A program made the translations under genes and the position numbers. DNA of 64,000 nt from Oopsacas minuta. Its lineage: Eukaryota; Animalia; Porifera. The notes beneath the pieces are model-generated. The model saw only the letters and a list, made by a program, of their open reading frames with translations, was not told where the DNA came from and searched no databases. The stretch covers positions 620,001 through 684,000 of the forward strand of contig JAKMXF010000310.1 in NCBI GenBank assembly GCA_024704765.1, written 5' to 3'. The stretch's first letter is position 1. Each line of letters starts with the position of its first letter. Below, piece by piece: positions 634-63,464 of this stretch.

Positions 634-3600
634 TTATATTCGATTCAATTCATTATTCAACTTGTTTAGATTGTATAAATGAGGCTCAAATGTGTGTCCA
701 CTATTGACTAGATTATCAAAATAGATTCTTCTCTTCTTTACAGAAAAACTCTTAGATGTTAGGAACTGTTCTCGAATAGCCTTCCCACCGAACTGGATCA
801 ATCTCCGTTTAATCTGCCTGCAATATTCAAACACTTTCAGCTTGACTTCTTTATGTTTCTTCGGAATATTCTCTTTCGCGTATAATTTAACTGCTGTGAT
901 TATCGGGAATATATGAATACAATTCTTGATAAATGTATCCAAATCTCCAAGAACACGAGTAGTAAGAGCAGCTAGTTTGGGCAGGTTTAACGAAAGGCAG
1001 CTGACCTCTGCGATTATCTCCTTAGTAAGAGATAAATGTACTAACTCTATGAGTTCTATAATCGTACCAGAAGGTGTTACAAAGGTTGTGGAGATCTCTT
1101 CATCACGATTTCCCTGCAAAATTGAGAATTTTATGTAACAAGGGAGTCCATAGAGAATATAGAGCAATGTCTGCCCCCAATCACTACCCAGGGGGATTTC
1201 TTTTTGTCCCACACTTAAGTGTTGATCATCTAAAGTGAATCGATTCACTGACCTCGTCACAATCATAAACTTGGAGGTCGGCTCAATAGGAAACCGATGA
1301 ATATCTAATGTCCCGTAAGTGAAAGAAAGGAATTTAAGTCGTCGTGGATTATGTTCAACATTTGAAATGTAGTGTCTACATACAGGTGATTCCATTTCAA
1401 TGTTTTTTATTATTTCAATCTGTTTGTCTTTGAAATCATCGGGGTCAGGACCCATCATGTGATTACCTCTGTAATCCTTTCCTTCTAGAGTTATCTTTGG
1501 AGCCTGCAGACAGATACACCGCAAATATTTCTTCATTATCTCGTTAAGACTTGTTACTTCCGAAGGAAGAGAATCTATAAATAGCACTGAAGAATCATTA
1601 GAGACTGAATTTGCATCAACACCTACTCTACTATTATCCTTCAGATGCGTAACAACATCAATTGGATCGAAATATTGGAAGGGAGAGTTTGGAAATAGAA
1701 TAAGAGATCCACTATGTCTCCCTATCCAACTAACTTCATGTCTAGATCCTGTAGCACCTTTGGAAGAGAAACCATCGAACCTATCTCTGTCCCAGAAATC
1801 AACTTGTACACCCAGTAATTCGAATAGTCTTTGCCAGAGTACGAACTCCTTTCTTGAAATAGATTTATCAGTTACGAACAGAATATCAGCTGGTGGATGT
1901 GAAGGGATATAAAAGGGTATGACACGAATAAAATGCTGGCGATACTCAATCAGTTTTCCTCTCAAGATAAGATCTACTTGCACTGGACATCTGTCAAACA
2001 ACTCGGCAGTATTCGACAAGGCAACATTGAAAGTGACAGTAATTTTGCTAGCAGATTGTATTTGAATTACATCTACATAGAAGCTATTTGGCACATTGGG
2101 GTCATAATGTATTCTGTATGGACAGCTCGAATCTTCTGTTACTATCGCGAAAGGTAGCAGCCTCTTATCAAAATGAACTCTCAAAGCTATTTCTCCACCT
2201 GATTGAGGGTAGTTACCATAATGTATCGTTGATATGTTAGTCAAAGTAATATGAATACTAGCTTGTTCACCTCTACACATATTCTCCGGTATACCAATAT
2301 TATCTACTTTTACTGGATATTGTACGATGAGTCTATGGATTGTTTTTGCACTGTCGAAAGGTCGTCCTAAGAGATCAACTCTGGTCTCAAAGAATGCCTC
2401 ACCCAAATACGGCCCCTCAGAATTCGGCGGTGGAACATCAAATACTCTACCAACATATTCTTGAGTAATGGCCATTGTTTGTTGTGGAGGCAGAATTGGA
2501 AGTGTGACTGTTGTTGGATGGAATTTTACAGTTGAAGTTGACACCATAGATACTATTGCCCCTTCAGGTAATGTCATGCAACCAATATTCTGTAAGGTTA
2601 ACTTGTCTATTGTGATTTGCTCGTTAGGCTCAAATATCCCATCGTCTACTGCTGATCTAACATTGAGTGATTGAGCATCCACTTTAACATGATATCTGTA
2701 ACCAGATTGTTCAATAACAGTTTGACCATCCAGGCTAAGGAGTACGAACAATAAACTTCCATCACGCCCCTTAGCTCCGTTATTGCCAGGCGGCCCATTT
2801 TGACCTTGGTACCCGGGAAAACCACTCGACCCCCTTGATCCTGAAAACCCAGATGAACCGCTAGGATTTCCACTACCTCCGAAACCCCCACTACCCCCAT
2901 GTCCCCCACTCCCTCCATCCCCACCATCCCCTCCAAACCCAGAGTGTCCACCCTTTCCAGGTTCTCCTGCATTTACTGCTACTTCGACTAGATGTAGCAG
3001 CTTAGGGTCACTAGAGTGGACGATACAATGACCTCCATTTCCAGAATTCGCTGCATCACCACCTCTTCCACCATTCCCGCCTATACCTCCTTGACCACCG
3101 TCACCTCCCCTACCCCCATTTCCGCCACTTCCTCCACTACTATTATCACTCCCACTGCTTCCACTGCCCCCACTTCCACCATGCCCCCCATGTCCTCCTG
3201 TCCCTCCTTTCCCACCCTGACCTCCAGGACCGCCATGACCTCCATGCCCACCAGTACAGTCCACACATAGAATGTACTCGCTACTCTCACCACCTAAATT
3301 TACACAATCTTCTAGTGTTCCGTTTATATTCAGATTTTCAGGTTGTCCAGATATGTATAATGAGAGGTCTGAACCATTAGTCCCATGAGTTCCTGGAGCT
3401 CCATCTGTTCCCGGATACCCTGGACCCCCAGTTCCACCTGGGCCTCCCGGGTATCCTGACCCTCCGCTGAAACCAGACGCACCATGCGATCCATGATGGC
3501 CTAATTCTCCCATTATTCCCATCTGCCCACTAGGCCCGTGCATTCCATCGATTCCTTTCGCTACTATCCATGCTCCCCATCTCTCTTTCTTGCTCACAGC

Positions 3601-4554
3601 TTTATCAACGTGATATGAGACAGTGGAGCTAGTCTCGTCGCCCCGTGGGACTTCTGGCTCTAACCGATCCGCTCCGTATATCAGCTGACGACATTCCAAT
3701 TGCAAAGGTGTTTGTTTGGCTGGCCTTGGATCTTCATAGAAAGTTTGTTGTTGAATGTGATCGATGAAAATCCGCGATTTTAAGACAGGATCCCATAGCT
3801 CTTGCTGTCCAGGTTGCAGATCTACCTCTAAGTCGAATCCAATGCTAATCAGAACATGTACTGCTTGTCCAATTGGAGGTAGAAAAGTATCATGAAGCTG
3901 TCTGTTCGTTATCAGTTTTCCTTCCTGTAGCATTCTCAAAGGTTCAGTTAACATCTTTTTATCATGTTGCTCTGTTTGGTATGAAGGTACCTTCATGTAC
4001 ACGTTTAAATCCCTTTCAGTGTATTTAGGTAGTTCCTTATCTGGGTTGGTGGAAGGTGTCTGTTGAATTGAATTGCTGATGTCTGCAGCCGTTTGTAAGG
4101 GATCGATTGCGTGTGTTATGTCCCAAATACCAGCCCACTGTTGCTCCATCTTTCTCTCTTCAACCCCTAGGATTGGAGAGAAGAGACCGCGCCCTGTAGC
4201 ACCTAGACAAGCCATCAACCATCTCTGTTGTGTTATGTCTTTCATTTTGAAAGTAGTTGACGATTTTTCTAATTTACAAGTGACGGTTATTCCCAGGAAT
4301 TTATCTGGCTCATGAGGATTGTTGTCAACGAATTCTACTAATACATTTTCGTTCTCACCATGTGTAAGCGTGAATAGATTTTGAAAATTTTCATCTCCAT
4401 TGTCTACAACTTGAAAGGGAGGTTCAACATTAACTTTTCGGATGATAGTGATCCTAGCATTTTTCCATCTTTTCAGGATCTTACTCTTACGTTGGCAATA
4501 ACAGGAGTACTCTCGTACAATTCCAGGTATTAGAACTGGTACATTTTCGCCCAT
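634..4554 (-). CDS. 1306-aa intronless protein: PH-like N-terminus, WW-like domain, three Gly-X-X/GGX tracts, beta-rich and alpha/beta C-terminal region
   Basis: Uninterrupted 3921-nt ORF with ATG in good context. PH-like pattern (CQRKSKILKRWKNARITI ... TTFKMKDITQQRWLMACL), WW-like LQPGQQELWDPVLKSRIFIDHIQQQTFYEDPR, Gly-rich region at nt 2758-3555. No signal peptide. Confidence 0.85.
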   Translation of the reverse strand: MGENVPVLIPGIVREYSCYCQRKSKILKRWKNARITIIRKVNVEPPFQVVDNGDENFQNLFTLTHGENENVLVEFVDNNPHEPDKFLGITVTCKLEKSSTTFKMKDITQQRWLMACLGATGRGLFSPILGVEERKMEQQWAGIWDITHAIDPLQTAADISNSIQQTPSTNPDKELPKYTERDLNVYMKVPSYQTEQHDKKMLTEPLRMLQEGKLITNRQLHDTFLPPIGQAVHVLISIGFDLEVDLQPGQQELWDPVLKSRIFIDHIQQQTFYEDPRPAKQTPLQLECRQLIYGADRLEPEVPRGDETSSTVSYHVDKAVSKKERWGAWIVAKGIDGMHGPSGQMGIMGELGHHGSHGASGFSGGSGYPGGPGGTGGPGYPGTDGAPGTHGTNGSDLSLYISGQPENLNINGTLEDCVNLGGESSEYILCVDCTGGHGGHGGPGGQGGKGGTGGHGGHGGSGGSGSSGSDNSSGGSGGNGGRGGDGGQGGIGGNGGRGGDAANSGNGGHCIVHSSDPKLLHLVEVAVNAGEPGKGGHSGFGGDGGDGGSGGHGGSGGFGGSGNPSGSSGFSGSRGSSGFPGYQGQNGPPGNNGAKGRDGSLLFVLLSLDGQTVIEQSGYRYHVKVDAQSLNVRSAVDDGIFEPNEQITIDKLTLQNIGCMTLPEGAIVSMVSTSTVKFHPTTVTLPILPPQQTMAITQEYVGRVFDVPPPNSEGPYLGEAFFETRVDLLGRPFDSAKTIHRLIVQYPVKVDNIGIPENMCRGEQASIHITLTNISTIHYGNYPQSGGEIALRVHFDKRLLPFAIVTEDSSCPYRIHYDPNVPNSFYVDVIQIQSASKITVTFNVALSNTAELFDRCPVQVDLILRGKLIEYRQHFIRVIPFYIPSHPPADILFVTDKSISRKEFVLWQRLFELLGVQVDFWDRDRFDGFSSKGATGSRHEVSWIGRHSGSLILFPNSPFQYFDPIDVVTHLKDNSRVGVDANSVSNDSSVLFIDSLPSEVTSLNEIMKKYLRCICLQAPKITLEGKDYRGNHMMGPDPDDFKDKQIEIIKNIEMESPVCRHYISNVEHNPRRLKFLSFTYGTLDIHRFPIEPTSKFMIVTRSVNRFTLDDQHLSVGQKEIPLGSDWGQTLLYILYGLPCYIKFSILQGNRDEEISTTFVTPSGTIIELIELVHLSLTKEIIAEVSCLSLNLPKLAALTTRVLGDLDTFIKNCIHIFPIITAVKLYAKENIPKKHKEVKLKVFEYCRQIKRRLIQFGGKAIREQFLTSKSFSVKKRRIYFDNLVNSGHTFEPHLYNLNKLNNELNRI

Positions 4555-6083: not shown

Positions 6084-8415
6084 TAGCTCTACGTATACGT
6101 ACGTAACTGAATAAACAAGTCAAATTAGAGTTGGATTCTAGAAATTAGTGAATTTGTTTGATAACATGTAAACTATATCCCCACTACGTATAACAAATTT
6201 ACAATATGTATAATTATCCAAAATGCCAAAAATGGACAGTGTATATAAATATTTTGTAATAATATTACTTGAACAGAAGGTGGTAGGTATTTGATAATTG
6301 TATTTAATAACTCATAATAAATAATATAATTTAACATGTCAATCTATATATTGCAATATATTCTATCAAATATTCTGTGTACCAATTACCGCCTGATACA
6401 GCGAGTTTCTCCTTAATCTCAAAATTTAGTTCGTTGGGTGGATGGTAAGAATATAATAAATTCAATGTTAGAGATACAGCTTTGTAGCGAGTTTCTCATG
6501 TAGTTGGGTTAAGTATGTGTTATTGACAAGGACTTATAGTATTCGAGGTTTCAATTGAAGTAGCTCAGAGTCGATATTTTCATAGATTGAGTGTTGTTGC
6601 GGTGTTTCAAATGTTTCTTCCATGGTATCCAGGCTCAATATATCATCCAATGAATCTAAATACATAATAAATAAGTGAAATGTAGGATTGCTATTATTAA
6701 TCGAATCAAAACAGAACACAACTAGTTTTATATGTACGTAATCATGGGCTGAGTCAATTAGTTATAGTTCAGTACAATATTGTCTCGCTAATATATTTAC
6801 CGCTAGATGGGAATTTGCAAGGTCTTTGGACTTCTTTGATTTGCCTGTCTTCGTTCGAACCTGCCTTTTTTCGTTTTTGCGAGAATGACATTTTCGTGAT
6901 AGATGGATAGGTAATTTGGTTGTTTTGCTATCTGGGTCTTTGCGAGCAACCAGGTGGCTTGGTTTATCTTTCTCTATCGTATATGATCCCAAATATTTCA
7001 TTGCATCTTTTGTTCCTGGGAGTCGCTTGGCTTTCTTTATATTATGTACAAGTACTTCATCTCCTTCCACAAATTCTGATCAAAGTTAAAACAATGATTG
7101 TACAAAGAATTATAATCTGCCAATTACGTACAGTTTGCAATGATGCTAATTTTATAACTAAAAGTAGGTGTTTTGGATTTTAAGAATTAATATAATTGAG
7201 GAAACAAGAAATTAGTTCCGATTCAAGACTATTTCATATTTACCTGATTATACAACAGTTAGTTTCAATATTTTGTTGTGTGACTCAACAAGTCCGTTAC
7301 TTTGTGAGTGGTATGCTGTGGTTCTTCTGGTGTTGACATTTATCTTGTGAAATTCTTGAAATTCCTATTTTGAAAGTAAATAAGAGAACGATAACAATCT
7401 ACTAAGCGCATGTATTTAGTCTTGTACAACAATAGTTAGAAAGATATAATGATTAATAAGGTAAAATTTCCTCCTGAAGGTAGTAGCATTAATTCGGAAA
7501 TTCTTATTTATTAGTATTTAACATAAATTATAATCCAATTTTCCACACGGTTACTTAAATATAGCCATCAGGACGCATAATATCCTACCAGGGTATATAT
7601 TGAAGTAATGCGCTGATAATTGACAATGCAACATGTTACGTACGTATATCCAATATAGTAAGTTGTATTGTGTATCGGGAATAATTTACTTGGTGTATTT
7701 ACAATTACTAATCTCGAGTATGTAAAAAATATGAGTTACCTTGCTTGAAAATTCTGTTCCCTGATCATGTTGGAGGATGTTAGGTACGCCGAATGAGAAA
7801 TAAATTTCCTGTAAACAATCCAATATTTCTTTAGAAGTTTTAGTCTTGAGTGGTCGGGCAATTACAAATTTACTCAGGTAACACACGATAACAAGAATGT
7901 GCAGAAATCCAAGTACAGTGCGGGACATATTGCATACAAGGTCAATTCCACAATGACACCATGGTTCTTCAGGAGGAGGAATAGGTTGAAGCTCTCGTTG
8001 TGACTGAGGAGGTAGAGCAGCAGAGGTTTGACAGTGATGGCAAGTTCGGATCTAGAACGGGAAATGATTTAATTGTCAGTTTGTAGTCCAGTCTAATGTA
8101 ATTTGCTACGTTCCAGATGTTCCACTAAATTAGCATTCCGTCCCGCTTTTTCTTCACTCAGGTTGGCAAATATGTTTATGTGAAATACTTCCACTACCTA
8201 TCCCAATTACTAACTACCGCAAGGATCATTAGTTATTAGATATATGGTTGGTTGGTTGTACCGCATAAATAGATTTCCATATGATAAATTGTATACCGGT
8301 ATACTAAATATCATCAGATCGCACAATTTGAATTTTACAATCGCACAAATAAAGCTGTATACAGTAGAATAATTACAAAGTGAATAACCTCAAACTATAA
8401 AATACATTCTGTTCT

Positions 8416-10816
8416 CAGACTTATCAACCCCTTTTGCAATTTTCCTTGGATTTCACGATATTTCCCCGATTACACACGAAAATATCAAGAAATATAGAAA
8501 AATATAGAAAAAATTTAGAAAAATATAGCAAAAATTGAGAAAAATTAAGAAAAATATAGAAAAAATATAGAAAAAAATAGAAAAAATATAGAAAAATATA
8601 GCAAAAATTTAGAAAAATTAAGCAAAAATATAGAAAAAATATAGAAAAAAATAGAAAAAATATAGAAAAATATAGGAAAATTTAGAAAAATTAAGCAAAA
8701 ATATAGAAAAATATAGAAAAAATAGAAAAATATAGCAAAAATTTAGAAAAATAGAAAAAATATAGAAAAATATAGAAAAAATTAGAAAAATATAGGAAAA
8801 TTTAGAAAAATATAGCAAAAATTTAGAAAAATTAAGCAAAAATATAGAAAAAATATAGAAAAAATATAGAAAAATATAGAAAAAATTCAGAAAAATATAG
8901 AAAAAATATAGAAATTATAGAAAAAATTTAGAAAAATACAGCAAAAATTTAGAAAAATTAAGCAAAAATATAGAAAAATATAGACAAAATTTAGAAAAAT
9001 ATAGAAAAAATATAGAAATTATAGAAAAAATTTAGAAAAATACAGCAAAAATTTAGAAAAATTAAGCAAAAATATAGAAAAAATATAGAAAAAATATAGA
9101 AAAATATAGGAAAATTTAGAAAATTAAGCAAAAATATAGAAAAATATAGAAAAAATAGAAAAATATAGCAAAAATTTAGAAAAATTAAGCAAAAATATAG
9201 AAAAAATATAGAAAAAAATAGAAAAAATATGGAAAAAATATAGAAAAATATAGCAAAATTTAGCAAAAATATAGAAAAAATTTAGAAAAATTAAGCAAAA
9301 ATATAGAAAAAATATAGAAAAAATATAGAAAAATATAGAAAAAAATAGAAAAAATATAGAAAAATATAGAAAAAATTAGAAAAATATAGGAAAATTTAGA
9401 AAAATATAGCAAAAATTTAGAAAAATTAAGCAAAAATATAGAAAAAATATAGAAAAAATATAGAAAAATATAGAAAAAATTCAGAAAAATATAGAAAAAA
9501 TATAGAAATTATAGAAAAAATTTAGAAAAATACAGCAAAAATTTAGAAAAATTAAGCAAAAATATAGAAAAAATATAGAAAAAAATAGAAAAAATATAGA
9601 AAAAATATAGAAAAATATAGCAAAATTTAGCAAAAATATAGAAAAAATTTAGAAAAATTAAGCAAAAATATAGAAAAAATATAGAAAAAATATAGAAAAA
9701 TATAGGAAAATTTAGAAAATTAAGCAAAAATATAGAAAAATATAGAAAAAATAGAAAAATATAGCAAAAATTTAGAAAAATTAAGCAAAAATATAGAAAA
9801 AATATAGAAAAAAATAGAAAAAATATAGAAAAAATATAGAAAAATATAGCAAAATTTAGCAAAAATATAGAAAAAATTTAGAAAAATTAAGCAAAAATAT
9901 AGAAAAAATATAGAAAAAATAGAAAAATATAGAAAAAAATAGAAAAAATATAGAAAAATATAGAAAAAATTAGAAAAATATAGGAAAATTTAGAAAAATA
10001 TAGCAAAAATTTAGAAAAATTAAGCAAAAATATAGAAAAAATATAGAAAAAATATAGAAAAATATAGAAAAAATTCAGAAAAATATAGAAAAAATATAGA
10101 AATTATAGAAAAAATTTAGAAAAATACAGCAAAAATTTAGAAAAATTAAGCAAAAATATAGAAAAATATAGACAAAATTTAGAAAAATATAGAAAAAATA
10201 TAGAAATTATAGAAAAAATTTAGAAAAATACAGCAAAAATTTAGAAAAATTAAGCAAAAATATAGAAAAAATATAGAAAAATATAGAAAAAAAAAAGAAA
10301 AAATATAGAAAAATATAGAAAAAATTAGAAAAATATAGGAAAATTTAGAAAAATATAGCAAAAATTTAGAAAAATTAAGCAAAAATATAGAAAAAATATA
10401 GAAAAAATATAGAAAAATATAGAAAAAATTCAGAAAAATATAGAAAAAATATAGAAATTATAGAAAAAATTTAGAAAAATACAGCAAAAATTTAGAAAAA
10501 TTAAGCAAAAATATAGAAAAAATATAGAAAAATATAGAAAAAAAAAAGAAAAAATATAGAAAAATATAGAAAAAATTAGAAAAATATAGGAAAATTTAGA
10601 AAAATATAGCAAAAATATAGAAAAATATAGCAAAAATTTAAAAAAATTAAGCAAAAATATAGAAAAAAATAGAAAAAATATAGAAAAAATATAGAAAAAT
10701 ATAGAAAAAATTTAGAAAAATATAGAAAAAATATAGCAAAATATAGCAAAATTTCCCCTGGATTTGAAGTGAAATCCCGGGGTTATCCAGGGATCCCTGG
10801 AGGGTTGGTAAGTCTG
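8416..10816. mobile_element. 2401-bp non-autonomous DNA element (6-bp TSD family) filled with a satellite, inside a Ginger intron
   Basis: TIRs CAGACTTATCAACCC / GGGTTGGTAAGTCTG (14/15); TSD TGTTCT at 8410-8415 and 10817-10822; both ends are homologous to the 88-bp element at 29667-29754. Confidence 0.75.
8489..10753 (+). repeat. A-rich satellite of about 10-12-bp units (AAAAATATAG, AAAAATTTAG, AAAAATTAAGC) with a 594-bp higher-order period
   Basis: Diagnostic variant TTCAG at 8886, 9480 and 10074 (594-bp spacing), then at 10429; TAGGAAAATTT variant at about 8793, 9387 and 9981. Confidence 0.95.
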
Positions 10817-43230: not shown

Positions 43231-44763
43231 TTAGATCAATGTAGTATACGTGTATACAGGAACAAATATTACTATTCCAATGAAGATGAGCAGAAGATAG
43301 CGTAGTACAAGAAGTGACTTTTTGAGAACGGTGTATTGAACTTGTTTGTCAGGATAATCTACTTTAGGCAAAAGTTTTTGTTTGATACTGGCATCTCCCA
43401 AATTTGCATTCTGTAAGACTTTACCAAAAATCTTTCTCCAATCATACAAATACAGAATAAGAATCTCCAGCAAAGCTGAAACTAAGGAACCCGCAGATGG
43501 CATAAGAAAATATCCTACTGCCCTCCATTGGACATAGAAAGATAATAAAAGGCCAAGAGGAGTTGCTATCAATAGATTACACACAAACTGAATTAGCGTT
43601 GCATATACCTGGAGGGAACAAGCCGTTAGGATACTTCTTATGGCAGTTAATATATCTGTTACAATGCAAATACTGAGAATTCGAATTCCAAATTCAATTT
43701 TCACTCTCATCTCTTCGATGGATGTAAAGAGGTTGGAGAGAGGTTCAGCTAAAGAGAATGTCAAAACCCCAAAGCAACACTCAAAGAACACCAGATATAG
43801 AATTGCTATTATCGTTGTTCGCTTTGCCGCTTGTAAATTGCCTCCTCCAAGAAGATTTCCAATTCGAACAGATGTTCCAACTCCATAACCTATAGAACCC
43901 GCTAACGTCACACACCAGATTGTGTTCAGAATTCCCAACATTGCAAATTGCTGAATATCTTTAAGGATAAATCCTATGAAAACAATCGGAGCAATCCTAA
44001 AAATAATAACATCTAGCATTAGTTGTGCTAAACATGCTGATCCATATTTTAACATATGACACCAACCAGTGAGAAATTCAAACGACCAACCATTAAAAAT
44101 CAAGATGTGAATATTTGTCAACTTGATGTAGGAAAACGCCAAGACAGCAACTATATTTGTACTAATAATGTAAGCTAAACCTACACCTTGTATATCTAGT
44201 GGTATCACAACAACTAGCAGATATTGTAAGCAGATATTGCACACGTTCCCTGCAACCATGATACACATAATAGAATATACGATATTCTGAGATTGCAGTA
44301 ATCCGTTTGCTAGTTTGTAGTATATGAAAGCTGGATAACCAAAACAGAACATCGTAGTGTACTGGCCAGCTCCTTTTGCCAGCTCTATGTCTCCAGTGAT
44401 GTAGAGAATTACAGGTGTCACACCTATCCAAACACTCAACAAGGGAAAAAAGCTGAGTGATGCGATTAGCAGAGCTCTCATGAAGTAGGTTCCTACTAAT
44501 ATGTGGTTGTAAGCTCCGTGTGCCTGGGAGCACAGCGTACACATACCAACAGTTATTCCTTGCATTATTGCGTATGCTGTGATTCCTATAATTGTTTGTC
44601 CAAGATAGAGAGCGCTAACCTTTCCGCTAATGTCCGCCCCAGATGTACGAGAGAGGAATATCGTACCTGTTTTTACTTGAATGGCATCGCTAAGGAGGCT
44701 AAATGCTCCAACAATAGCGAGCTTGTTCAAGTAGTATAATTCATTCAAAGTATATTTAATCAT
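43231..44763 (-). CDS. MATE family (SLC47-like) efflux transporter copy B, 510 aa, intronless
   Basis: TLCSQAHGA..VGTYFMRALLI and GYGVGTSVRIGNLLGGGNLQAAKR motifs; about 12 core TMs plus a 13th C-terminal TM as in animal MATEs. ATG at 44763; the track start is TTG. Confidence 0.92.
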   Translation of the reverse strand: MIKYTLNELYYLNKLAIVGAFSLLSDAIQVKTGTIFLSRTSGADISGKVSALYLGQTIIGITAYAIMQGITVGMCTLCSQAHGAYNHILVGTYFMRALLIASLSFFPLLSVWIGVTPVILYITGDIELAKGAGQYTTMFCFGYPAFIYYKLANGLLQSQNIVYSIMCIMVAGNVCNICLQYLLVVVIPLDIQGVGLAYIISTNIVAVLAFSYIKLTNIHILIFNGWSFEFLTGWCHMLKYGSACLAQLMLDVIIFRIAPIVFIGFILKDIQQFAMLGILNTIWCVTLAGSIGYGVGTSVRIGNLLGGGNLQAAKRTTIIAILYLVFFECCFGVLTFSLAEPLSNLFTSIEEMRVKIEFGIRILSICIVTDILTAIRSILTACSLQVYATLIQFVCNLLIATPLGLLLSFYVQWRAVGYFLMPSAGSLVSALLEILILYLYDWRKIFGKVLQNANLGDASIKQKLLPKVDYPDKQVQYTVLKKSLLVLRYLLLIFIGIVIFVPVYTYTTLI

Positions 44764-46079
44764 GTTTAATACCAAATTTCACTTTATTCTAACAGACTTG
44801 ATTTGCTCTATAAAGTTGTTTTACTTGTAAATTTATTCGTATAGAAATTGAATTTACATTTATATACATCAAAATACACAACTAACGAAACTATAGTATA
44901 TTCAGGGTATTTAACCATGGATTACTTCAATTTATTAAATTTGAAAGGCAATTCCAATATTTTCGATGATATAAAGTTTGGTACATTCTGGCTGGAATAA
45001 ATGTATTATTGATAGTCAATAATTGATACTAACTATATAATCAAACTATGACCTCATTTGATTTACCAACAACAGGGAAATATGTCATCAAACATGTGCC
45101 ATTTTCTAGCTCTGTTTATCGAACGCTGGTGCGAGACTTGGCTCAATGATAGTCACGAAAACTCCTCACTTATGCCTAAAAGATACAAGTTAGTTCGACG
45201 CGATAGAAATAGTGGAGAGAAACACGGAGGAATACTGTTGCTTGTTAATCAAAATTCTTCTCGATGATTTCGTGAGAGACGATTTTCCTATAGGTATTCT
45301 CATGTAGGAATTCCGATAGAAAGAAAATAATTCCCAATCTGATGGCAACCCTGAAAAAAGAATATATTCATCTCAAGAGAATGTATAAGAATTCTCATAT
45401 ATGTAATTCCCATGGGTTTTCCATATGGGAATTCCCATACCCACGGAACCCTGGTATATATATAGTCTCGTCTCGTCTCGTTACTTTTAAAGGTGACTGC
45501 TGTGGGACACTTTTGTATAATTCATAATTTATTGAAATGGTTTGACGTTGCACATTCAGCAATTTCCCGAATGTACAATGGTTAAATTATATCCTGATTA
45601 CTTAAAAGTTTAAATACAATTCTAATGTAAATCTGAAAGAATGAAAAAGAGCGAGATTTGAGCTTGCTCCATTTTTCTTGGAGCGGGATCCGGAGTGCGC
45701 TCCTTTTAGCGCGGGAGCGCGCTCCAAAAATGAGGAGTGCTTAATACCTGAAGATTCCATTTTGCCTGCCAGGTTGGTTGACACTTATTATAGTGTTGTC
45801 GCAACTAATGGGAGAACTACCATCAGTTGCGACAGCCTTGTAATATATGTGGGCTTAGCCGCCTAATGAGCTAGCTTTAGCCTCCCAGACCCTCTGATCC
45901 TAGGCATACGAGTATCTATCCCCTAGGCCCCTAAATGAGAATTAAGATGTAGTATATTCTACAGTATTTAGTAGTTAATCACAACAGCATAATCTCGGGT
46001 TTGTAAACCCTAAATTTAATTATCTATGACAACATGAATCTATACAAGATACAAACTAAAACAGTATCTTAATTGACTA

Positions 46080-62125: not shown

Positions 62126-63464
62126 CTACGGGCGTTCAATAAGTAGTCGTTATTCCAAATTTTGTAAGTCGGAATATTTCGACCTAGATCAAACTGAATC
62201 TTCTAATAACAATCCATCTATTGTGAATTCAATAATGCAGAGCTTTTTTGATTCTGATGTCTCGTTGAAATATTGTACCTATTTACATTTTGACAGTTTA
62301 TTATAGTAACATTTTTAATGGCTTCAAAAAGTACAGATTTCAAAATTGAGCAGAGAGCATATGTGAAGATCAGAACACTGCTCAAGGTTTCACCAACAGA
62401 TGTCCACAAAGATTTAGAGGAAGTTTATAAGGATACAGCACTTCCATATTCCACTGTTGTTGATTGGGCTAGACGCTTTCGTGAAGGTAGAGTGTCCATT
62501 GAAGATGGGGCAAGAATAGGGAGACCAGTTTCCAGCACCAATGACAAAAATATCCTTGAGGTATCCGCGTTACTTGAAGAAGACCCTCATATCACGCTTG
62601 TGGAGATAGCTGATGCGGTTGGTATCTCAACGGGAACTGCTCAAGCTATTGTACATGATAATATGAAATTCCGAAAGATATGTGCTCGATGGGTGCCGCA
62701 TTTACTAACTCAGGCCCAGAAAGCAAAGAGGGTCCAATGCGCTACTAAATTGCTCTCTGAGTTTGATCGAACTGACTCCAGAAGGTTATTTGAGATAGTA
62801 ACAGGTGACGAAACTTGGGTACGTTATTCTGAGCCTTTATCAAAAGAAGCAAACAAAGTATGGGTGGCAAAAGGACAGGACCCACCAATGATCCCTCGAC
62901 ATGACTTTCGGGATCCGAAGGTTATGTACTGTATATTTTTTGATTCTAATGGTCCAGTGTGCCAGATTTGTGTCCCCAAATACCAAACAATAACAGGCTC
63001 CTTCTACACCAATGAGTGTCTAACAGAGGTTGAAAAATTCTACCAAAATCGACGGCCAAGGACTGGAACTCGTGGATTGCGAATATTGCATGATAACGCC
63101 CGACCGCACAAGACAAAGCTGGTTAGAGAAAAGTTAGAAGCTATGAAAATTGTGGAGCTAGATCACCCTCCCTACTCGCCAGATCTAGCTCCCTGTGACT
63201 TTTGGTTGTTTCCAAAGCTAAAGAAACATCTATCAGGCAGGAAATTCGAGAGTCGAGCTCAGATAGGATCGGCGATTTTCCAGTATATGAAAGGTGTACC
63301 AACCGAAGACTACAAAAAAGTATTTTTCGATTGGATAAAAAGGCTGAAATTGGTTTTACAGCACGAAGGGGAATACTTTGAGAAACTCCATCACTGATTA
63401 CACAATTGTGCTAGAAAAATTTAGAATTACAATGTGATAACGACTACTTATTGAACGCCCGTAG
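62126..63464 (+). mobile_element. Full-length mariner element, 1339 bp
   Basis: Perfect 28-bp TIRs CTACGGGCGTTCAATAAGTAGTCGTTAT, with TA on both sides. Confidence 0.95.
62318..63397 (+). CDS. Intact mariner transposase (D,D34D), 359 aa
   Basis: WVPHLL, IVTGDETW, LHDNARPH and HPPYSPDLAPCD motifs; 34 residues counted between the second and third Asp. Confidence 0.96.
   Translation: MASKSTDFKIEQRAYVKIRTLLKVSPTDVHKDLEEVYKDTALPYSTVVDWARRFREGRVSIEDGARIGRPVSSTNDKNILEVSALLEEDPHITLVEIADAVGISTGTAQAIVHDNMKFRKICARWVPHLLTQAQKAKRVQCATKLLSEFDRTDSRRLFEIVTGDETWVRYSEPLSKEANKVWVAKGQDPPMIPRHDFRDPKVMYCIFFDSNGPVCQICVPKYQTITGSFYTNECLTEVEKFYQNRRPRTGTRGLRILHDNARPHKTKLVREKLEAMKIVELDHPPYSPDLAPCDFWLFPKLKKHLSGRKFESRAQIGSAIFQYMKGVPTEDYKKVFFDWIKRLKLVLQHEGEYFEKLHH

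What the first reader, a model, noticed from the sequence alone, without database searches (positions are those of the whole stretch)
634..4554. Intronless 1306-aa protein joining PH-like and WW-like signalling modules to a glycine-helix region and a fungal-type C-terminus
Seen: no signal peptide; an N-terminal PH-like pattern; a WW-like domain with non-canonical aromatic positions; three Gly-X-X tracts; then a RYHVKV..VDDGIFEPNEQITI..LQNIGCM block and an ADILFVT...WQRLFELLGVQVDFWD block. From memory, those C-terminal blocks resemble an uncharacterised Gly-rich family known mainly from fungi (often labelled DUF7932-like); this is unverified. Inference: a patchily distributed or horizontally acquired module has been coupled to animal membrane-targeting (PH) and Pro-motif-binding (WW) domains. 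That would be a cytoplasmic scaffold architecture I do not recognise, and it is the best candidate here for an undescribed system.
Basis: partly seen in the sequence, partly recalled or inferred. Interest (0 to 1): 0.75.

Follow-up and report, generated by a model that had tools for sequence, protein, structure and literature searches.

The report
Sponge PH–WW glycine-bundle DUF7932 protein
This is an intact glass-sponge gene for a large cytosolic protein that joins a membrane-lipid-type PH domain and a degenerate WW domain to a rigid glycine-helix bundle and a conserved C-terminal module; it belongs to an old, catalogued but never-studied eukaryotic family and is not a foreign import.

Summary
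Window 634-4554 (minus) is one uninterrupted 1306-aa ORF. It has an N-terminal PH fold, a WW-like domain lacking the second signature Trp, three Gly-triplet tracts and a Pfam DUF7932 match above threshold.

New here:
- Behind the bundle come two beta-sandwiches, an unassigned alpha/beta domain and a helical bundle (model pLDDT 90.5).

The genome matches Oopsacas minuta. It holds five family loci, one of them broken.

The family has at least 769 cluster representatives. Named members come from sponge, a nemertean, trematodes, amoebae, Naegleria and a giant virus. Relatives carry true PH, PX+C2 or FYVE domains, which points to recruitment to phosphoinositide membranes.

On a tree the animal members form one clade (support 0.999). 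The PH-WW head is essentially confined to that clade. GC3 is native and dN/dS is 0.13, so horizontal acquisition is not supported.

Function is unknown. My best reading is a membrane-recruited cytosolic scaffold. No paper mentions the family.

This scan already reported a paralogue on another piece of this genome (s1-273604) with the same reading.

The parts
634..4554 (-). Complete single-exon ORF, 1306 aa (stop codon at 634-636)
   Evidence: It aligns over its full length with 1273-1308-aa homologues. dN/dS against the C6 paralogue is 0.13.
4192..4533 (-). PH-fold domain, aa 8-121. Basic beta1-beta2 region R22 K23 K25 K28 R29 K31 R34. W112 sits in the C-terminal helix.
3862..4179 (-). Predicted disordered linker, aa 126-231
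   Evidence: pLDDT 36-51. Poorly conserved in alignment A5.
3868..3885 (-). Conserved F-x-P-P-x-G motif (FLPPIG, aa 224-229), just upstream of the WW-like domain
   Evidence: F224, P227 and G229 are 90% or more conserved across 36 relatives.
3721..3819 (-). WW-like domain, aa 246-278. W254 is kept, the second Trp is Y273, and H266 and P276 are kept.
   Evidence: The family profile hits 45 WW-domain sequences in the PDB, best E 1.1e-5. The single sequence scores 0.013 to MAGI1 WW. Three short strands lie at aa 250-255, 260-265 and 270-272.
2755..3552 (-). Glycine-rich polyproline-II helix bundle, aa 335-600. It has three Gly-triplet tracts (aa 335-395, 434-507, 530-600) separated by short beta segments (aa 397-432, 509-526).
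2314..2754 (-). Beta-sandwich 1, aa 601-747, containing the Pfam DUF7932 match (aa 631-746)
   Evidence: Pfam. Model pLDDT is above 90. Hits are to tandem Ig-like or macroglobulin-like domains.
1915..2313 (-). Beta-sandwich 2, aa 748-880
1075..1890 (-). Alpha/beta domain of unassigned family, aa 889-1160. It starts with ADILFVT - helix - VQVDFWD.
   Evidence: The AF2 secondary-structure order is beta-alpha-beta-beta-alpha-beta-alpha-beta plus hairpins, with pLDDT mostly above 85. There is no Pfam or PDB sequence match even at E 10. It was not tested alone by fold search.
637..1062 (-). C-terminal helical bundle, aa 1165-1306
   Evidence: Helices at model positions 569-697. The region is conserved within the animal clade.

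Best explanation
Shown or predicted with high confidence: the gene encodes a cytosolic multidomain protein of the DUF7932 family. Its order is PH fold, disordered linker, FxPPxG motif plus degenerate WW domain, a polyproline-II glycine helix bundle of about 265 residues, two beta-sandwiches, an alpha/beta domain and a helical bundle.

Inferred mechanism:
- The basic PH domain brings the protein to acidic or phosphoinositide membranes, probably endosomal or phagosomal. In relatives this job is done by FYVE, PX+C2 or canonical PH domains.
- The flexible linker and the WW-like domain bind a proline-motif partner, or fold back on the adjacent FLPPxG motif.
- The rigid bundle, sandwiches and first beta-alpha-beta make up the ancient, invariant core of the family. 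This core acts as a flat interaction platform held at the membrane.

It is a vertically inherited animal-clade member, duplicated in this sponge and kept under purifying selection.
For: - Architecture.
- Membrane-module fusions in relatives: P0080 and P0093 carry 3x FYVE, P0083 one FYVE, P0153 PX+C2, P0074 PH (E 6.8e-10) plus SAM, and P0078 PH plus WW.
- Cytosolic: no signal peptide or TM segment.
- Real and constrained: dN/dS is 0.13 overall and 0.07 over beta-sandwich 1. There are 769 related cluster representatives.
- Native: GC3 matches the neighbours, the animal clade has support 0.999, the genome holds five loci, and the neighbouring genes are animal-type.
- Scaffold rather than enzyme: across divergent members only L914, W921, D922, W943, G949, P955, P1036, G1081, P1089, P1121 and K1142 stay invariant in the alpha/beta domain.
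Against: - No experiment or expression data were available.
- The WW-like domain lacks two of the residues that form the proline-binding groove.
- Pfam-detectable lipid-binding domains occur in only a minority of relatives, about 6 of roughly 70 scanned.
- The alpha/beta and helical domains could not be searched on their own, so a catalytic or otherwise known fold is not excluded.
Confidence: 0.5

Rival explanations
1. Membrane-targeted enzyme. The alpha/beta domain (aa 889-1160) is catalytic, for example a hydrolase or transferase acting on a lipid or protein substrate. The PH/FYVE/PX modules only deliver it, and the bundle and sandwiches serve as a spacer.
For: - The secondary-structure order is Rossmann/flavodoxin-like.
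- Within the animal clade many polar residues are invariant: D890, D919, D922, S930, H939, R946, D966, H970, H1032, E1053, K1095, D1109, D1110.
Against: - In divergent members most of these residues vary. Only D922 and K1142 stay among the polar ones (54-sequence list).
- There is no Pfam or PDB sequence relative at E 10.
- Many relatives match the profile only up to about position 330, so the rest of the domain is not universally conserved.
Confidence: 0.2
2. Innate-immune or TIR-like signalling protein. The ADILFVT...VDFWD...LILFP...D966 stretch is a divergent TIR or related flavodoxin-like signalling domain.
For: By eye, the beta1-helix-beta2 motif resembles the start of TIR domains (own reading of the sequence). 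The family shows paralogue expansion plus a pseudogene.
Against: - No TIR-type Pfam family was hit in 48 members at E 10.
- hhalign of the 9-sequence alpha/beta alignment against the TIR domain of an Oopsacas TIR_2-containing ORF gives probability 0.4%.
- The candidate catalytic position D966 is not conserved family-wide.
Confidence: 0.04
3. Recent horizontal acquisition of the C-terminal module from fungi, protists, a giant virus or bacteria, fused in the sponge to animal PH and WW domains.
For: - The distribution is patchy.
- A Terrestrivirus homologue exists.
- A possibly bacterial member lies on a GC-rich, gene-dense metagenome contig.
- The single-exon structure.
Against: - The animal clade has support 0.999, and the PH-WW head is shared across it, including nemertean-type members.
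- GC3 is native.
- The genome holds five loci, with divergence reaching saturation (dS 0.97 to saturated).
- The genome averages only 1.59 introns per gene (PMC10280926).
Confidence: 0.05
4. Secreted collagen-like, adhesive or antifreeze structural protein.
For: - A weak Pfam Collagen hit (21 bits) and a weak Scl1 hit.
- The best structural match of the Gly region is an antifreeze protein.
Against: - No signal peptide or TM segment.
- The PH and WW domains, and the FYVE/PX fusions in relatives, are cytosolic modules.
- The Collagen score is below its cut-off of 27.2 bits.
- The tracts are GGX as much as GXY.
Confidence: 0.03

Closest known systems
Pfam DUF7932 (PF25560) proteins, e.g. Oopsacas minuta LOD99_9810 and LOD99_14153, Lineus longissimus LOC135501411 (XP_064649595.1)
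   Same: Same family. They are 80%, 56% and about 31% identical over the C-terminal 707 aa. The order of Gly tracts, DUF7932 sandwich, second sandwich, alpha/beta domain and helical end is the same, and so is the PH-like and WW-like head.
   Different: Nothing essential differs. All are annotated 'hypothetical' or 'uncharacterized'. The Pfam model covers only about 120 of the 1306 residues.
Glycine-rich polyproline-II helix bundles: snow-flea and springtail antifreeze proteins (2pne, 3bog, 7jjv). From the literature also the ALK/LTK glycine-rich domain, the Obg N-domain and the phage S16 gp38 tip (bioRxiv 10.1101/2023.11.25.568672).
   Different: - About 265 residues instead of 81-125.
- Cytosolic rather than secreted.
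- Interrupted by beta segments.
- Embedded between WW-like and Ig-like domains.
- No evidence of ice or ligand binding.
- Similarity may be convergent low-complexity rather than homology.
Animal WW-plus-membrane-module adaptors: KIBRA/WWC1 (tandem WW + C2); PLEKHA5/7 (WW-WW-PH; own knowledge, not tested)
   Same: A WW-type domain is combined with a lipid- or membrane-binding module in a cytosolic scaffold. KIBRA WW2 also lacks the second Trp and is the best PDB match (E 1.1e-5).
   Different: There is a single degenerate WW, the PH comes first, and there is no homology outside these two small domains. The bulk of the protein (aa 335-1306) has no counterpart in those adaptors.
FYVE/PX/C2-bearing members of the same family in Amoebozoa (Paradermamoeba levis P0080, Pyxidicula operculata P0153)
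   Same: Same Gly bundle, DUF7932 and alpha/beta core, joined to a phosphoinositide- or membrane-binding module.
   Different: The membrane module is different (FYVE at the C-terminus, or PX+C2 at the N-terminus), there is no WW-like region (0 of 35), and they sit in the other major clade of the tree.

Membership tests
Pfam DUF7932 (PF25560) family | HMM match above the curated gathering score | tested here: met
   48.3 bits against a cut-off of 27, E 1.7e-12, aa 631-746, profile positions 8-130 of 130.
Pfam DUF7932 (PF25560) family | Shares the wider module (Gly tracts, two sandwiches, alpha/beta start) with other DUF7932 proteins | tested here: met
   A profile of aa 600-1306 finds 769 representatives, 152 of them at E 1e-30 or better. 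47 of 48 scanned representatives carry DUF7932.
PH domain superfold | Seven-stranded beta-sandwich closed by a C-terminal helix with a conserved Trp | tested here: met
PH domain superfold | Match to Pfam PH (PF00169) | tested here: not met
   No PH hit for the window protein even at E 10. Relatives do match: P0074 at E 6.8e-10 and P0078 at E 0.046.
PH domain superfold | Phosphoinositide-binding basic motif in beta1-loop-beta2, and actual lipid binding | tested here: inconclusive
   A basic cluster is present (R22 K23 K25 K28 R29 K31 R34), but the canonical K-Xn-(K/R)-X-R spacing is not evident. Binding cannot be tested with these tools.
WW domain | Three-stranded antiparallel sheet of about 35 aa with sequence similarity to WW domains | tested here: met
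   Strands at aa 250-255, 260-265 and 270-272. 45 of 46 PDB profile hits are WW domains, best E 1.1e-5.
WW domain | Two signature Trp residues 20-22 aa apart, and the beta2 aromatic that forms the XP groove | tested here: not met
   W254 is present, but the second Trp position is Y273 and the beta2 Tyr position is I262. This comes from direct reading against the YAP1 and KIBRA alignments.
WW domain | Pfam WW (PF00397) above threshold; PPxY binding | tested here: not met
   No Pfam WW hit for the window protein. Relative P0078 scores 20.2 bits, below the cut-off of 26.9. Binding is not testable here.
Glycine-rich PPII helix bundle (snow-flea AFP type) | Gly-triplet repeats packing as a bundle of PPII helices | tested here: met
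Glycine-rich PPII helix bundle (snow-flea AFP type) | Secreted, ice-binding function | tested here: not met
   No signal peptide. Ice binding is not testable. The protein is therefore filed as sharing the fold, not as an antifreeze protein.
Collagen | Pfam Collagen above threshold; secretion | tested here: not met
   21 bits against a cut-off of 27.2. No signal peptide.
TIR domain (considered for aa 889-1160) | Profile similarity to TIR families | tested here: not met
   No TIR-type Pfam hit in 48 members. hhalign probability is 0.4% against the TIR domain of an Oopsacas TIR_2-containing ORF. This is a weak test because the target was a single sequence.

The most novel reading that the evidence does not exclude
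DUF7932 proteins are a previously unrecognised, ancient eukaryotic class of endomembrane-associated machines. Their invariant core would be the largest polyproline-II glycine helix bundle known, and the first cytosolic one outside Obg. It is welded to two Ig-like sandwiches and a new alpha/beta fold. Different lineages would deliver it to PI3P or phosphoinositide membranes (phagosome or endosome) through interchangeable PH, FYVE or PX-C2 modules. On this reading the family has a specific, still unknown role in phagotrophic or intracellular-digestion cell biology.
Probability: 0.25. Interest if true: 0.75.

Novelty: new variant of a known kind. Interest (0 to 1): 0.55.

Why it matters
Only a handful of natural polyproline-II helix bundles are known: antifreeze proteins, Obg, ALK/LTK, a phage tail tip and acetophenone carboxylase. 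A widespread cytosolic family built around a far larger bundle would broaden that fold class and offer a new rigid scaffold for study and design.

The repeated, independent fusion of one conserved core to PH, FYVE, PX and C2 modules is a strong hint of a membrane-linked function. That function has escaped study because the family is absent from the standard model organisms; none appeared among the named members. Naegleria, amoebae and flatworms offer tractable entry points.

For the sponge itself it is an ordinary native gene family, not evidence of gene transfer.

Tried and rejected
1. Assigning the alpha/beta and helical domains:
- Foldseek pdb, VIA wide, VIA second look and BFVD on the 707-residue model were all swamped by beta-sandwich hits.
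- PDB profile searches with A2 and A8 returned nothing at E 10.
- Pfam at E 10 gave only noise, SPOC at 0.13.
- ESM Atlas feature hits scored 0.90 or less and were uninformative.

2. TIR hypothesis: rejected for lack of support.

3. Prokaryotic relatives:
- Two peptide-pattern scans of 185,579 genomes found none.
- The 14 control genomes are negative for PF25560.
- These scans have low sensitivity. One GC-rich metagenome contig (L021) may be bacterial; this is unresolved.

4. Viral contigs: two pattern scans were negative.

5. A second word-based protein search with protist-clade sequences added only one new protein.

6. Collagen and adhesin readings: scores are below threshold.

7. HGT by composition: rejected.

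8. Literature: no paper for DUF7932, PF25560 or the locus tags.
Full report
**Observation.** Window 634-4554 (minus strand) is a single open frame of 1306 codons starting at ATG. The frame is open for only 8 further codons upstream. The N-termini of independent homologues align from residue 1-10, so the gene model is complete and single-exon. The strongest 19-residue hydrophobic window scores 1.35, so there is no signal peptide or membrane span. Pfam finds DUF7932 (PF25560) at aa 631-746, at 48.3 bits against a cut-off of 27, plus a sub-threshold Collagen hit. The three glycine tracts lie at aa 335-395, 434-507 and 530-600.

**Source genome.** The assembly has 61.46 Mb in 365 contigs. This matches the published Oopsacas minuta genome: 365 scaffolds, about 61 Mb, 36% G+C, 1.59 introns per gene (PMC10280926). 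Two paralogues are the NCBI proteins LOD99_9810 (80% identical) and LOD99_14153 (56%) of O. minuta. The window's other ORFs are animal-type: LRR-EGF, WD40, dynamin, MatE, Gcd10 and a mariner-type transposase. A single-exon gene is not unusual in this genome.

**N-terminal half (AF2 on aa 1-640, 36-sequence alignment, mean pLDDT 78).**
- The window protein does not reach Pfam PH. The same region aligns with the N-terminus of relative P0074, which does (E 6.8e-10). An HMM of the region recovers P0078, which was not in the seed alignment, at 6.8e-20.
- Residues 126-231 are predicted to be disordered.
- Residues 224-229 (FLPPIG) are a nearly invariant F-x-P-P-x-G motif.
- Residues 246-278 are WW-like. 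A five-sequence profile of aa 220-300 hits 46 PDB sequences, 45 of them WW domains: KIBRA 1.1e-5, YAP1 3.3e-4, Su(dx) 3.4e-4. The model shows three short strands.
- The first Trp (W254), H266 and P276 are kept. The second Trp is Y273 and the beta2 Tyr is I262. Two residues of the canonical proline-binding groove are therefore missing, as in the atypical second WW domain of KIBRA.

**C-terminal half (AF2 on aa 600-1306, 54-sequence alignment, mean pLDDT 90.5, pTM 0.83).**
- An alpha/beta domain follows (aa 889-1160), then a helical bundle (aa 1165-1306).
- All fold searches of this model were filled by sandwich hits, so the last two domains remain untested. They have no Pfam or PDB sequence relative at E 10.
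- I considered a TIR-like reading of the ADILFVT...VDFWD...LILFP stretch and found no support.
- Across divergent members only L914, W921, D922, W943, G949, P955, P1036, G1081, P1089, P1121 and K1142 are invariant there. That looks structural rather than catalytic.
- Many relatives match the profile only up to about position 330, just after VDFWD. The universal core is therefore the bundle, the two sandwiches and the first beta-alpha-beta.

**Family and distribution.**
- A four-sequence profile of aa 600-1306 finds 769 representatives of 50%-identity clusters, 152 of them at E 1e-30 or better.
- Named members: Lineus longissimus (Nemertea); the trematodes Calicophoron, Dicrocoelium and Opisthorchis; the amoebozoans Paradermamoeba and Pyxidicula; and Naegleria gruberi. 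BFVD adds a Terrestrivirus protein (E 3.1e-15).
- The contigs of unnamed members that I inspected look eukaryotic: they carry PIP5K, RGS, PHD/PLU-1 and myotubularin genes.
- One exception is a 4.9-kb, 57% GC metagenome contig with tightly packed same-strand genes and an ATPgrasp_ST neighbour. Its family ORF is really 1175 aa (L021:210-3737) and includes Gly-triplet tracts. It may be bacterial, but I could not settle this.
- Two pattern scans of prokaryotic genomes were negative but insensitive.

**Accessory domains.** Several relatives carry recognised membrane modules:
- P0080 and P0093 have three FYVE fingers, and P0083 and one further member have one.
- P0153 has PX+C2.
- P0074 has PH plus a C-terminal SAM.
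- P0078 has weak PH and WW matches.

This recurrent, independent fusion is the main functional clue.

**Evolution.**
- I built a FastTree (LG+gamma) of the C-terminal module from 89 sequences. These were chosen by 520 or more profile positions covered and thinned at 90% identity. Shorter fragments were left out, and the tree is midpoint-rooted.
- All named animals fall in one clade of 54 leaves (SH-like support 0.999). Amoebozoa and Naegleria fall in the other 35.
- The WW-like region is found in 37 of 54 animal-clade members and 0 of 35 others. The PH-like head is found in 31 of 54 against 1 of 35. Most animal-clade members that lack them are truncated gene models or trematodes.
- GC3 of the ORF is 0.33, against 0.31-0.46 for neighbouring genes. 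The GC excess lies in the Gly tracts: GC 0.54 but GC3 0.30.
- The genome holds five loci: C310 (this one), C6, C33, C44 and a broken copy on C188.
- Against the C6 paralogue dN is 0.125 and dS 0.967, a ratio of 0.13. The ratio falls to 0.07 over beta-sandwich 1.
- The gene is therefore native, old, duplicated and under purifying selection. Horizontal acquisition is not supported.

**Mechanism.**
- Shown or confidently predicted: the domain order and folds listed above.
- Inferred: the basic PH domain tethers the protein to acidic or phosphoinositide membranes, as FYVE, PX and C2 do in relatives. The linker and degenerate WW domain engage a proline motif, possibly the adjacent FLPPIG in cis. 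The rigid bundle-sandwich core presents a flat platform.
- I put this at about 0.5. An enzymatic alpha/beta domain is at about 0.2. The remaining probability is unassigned.

**Novelty.**
- The protein and its paralogues are already in public databases as 'hypothetical' or 'DUF7932 domain-containing'. No paper in the searched library mentions them.
- An earlier report of this scan (s1-273604) reached the same reading for a paralogue on another piece of this genome. It also mentioned bacterial members, which I could only partly test.
- I rate this a new variant of known kinds (PH/WW adaptor; PPII bundle) within a catalogued but unstudied family.

Noticed in passing
G000:C188:308256-310365 (loci L007-L009): This is the closest paralogue of the window gene, 88-92% identical. 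It is broken: one TGA, one TAA, and the match is split over three frames. It looks like a recent pseudogene of this family.
   Followed up: partly
L021:210-3737 (JGI metagenome 3300045138): A family member lies on a 57% GC, gene-dense contig next to an ATPgrasp_ST gene. The called start (1188) is too late: the open frame is 1175 aa and includes Gly-triplet tracts.
   Followed up: partly
BFVD A0A3G4ZNF8 (Terrestrivirus sp.): A giant virus of the Mimiviridae group encodes a 1137-aa DUF7932 protein. It aligns with the C-terminal model over 849 columns at E 3.1e-15. Two pattern scans of IMG/VR found no further viral copies.
   Followed up: partly
L003:759-4613 and L003:8001-10448: Two tandem family copies lie on one eukaryote-like metagenome contig (ERZ25069326). 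The first, of 1284 aa, had no Pfam hit on record although it matches by tblastn.
   Followed up: no
window 34058-35125 and 43231-44775 (minus): Two MatE-transporter ORFs lie about 9 kb apart. Each contains an identically sized nested 126-aa ORF (34512-34892 and 44162-44542), which suggests a recent tandem duplication.
   Followed up: no
window 8001-12000: A very AT-rich stretch (GC 0.18-0.28) with strong AT and GC skew. It overlaps the satellite/MITE noted by the scan at 8416-10816 (s1-266821).
   Followed up: no
window 62318-63397 (+): A 359-aa ORF with HTH and DDE (mariner/Tc1-type) transposase domains.
   Followed up: no
G000:C343:323126-323458 (L015) and G000:C3:186178-186384 (L016): The whole O. 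minuta assembly gives no match to Pfam TIR and only two to TIR_2. One of these is the C-terminus of a 480-aa ORF (L015:436-1878).
   Followed up: no
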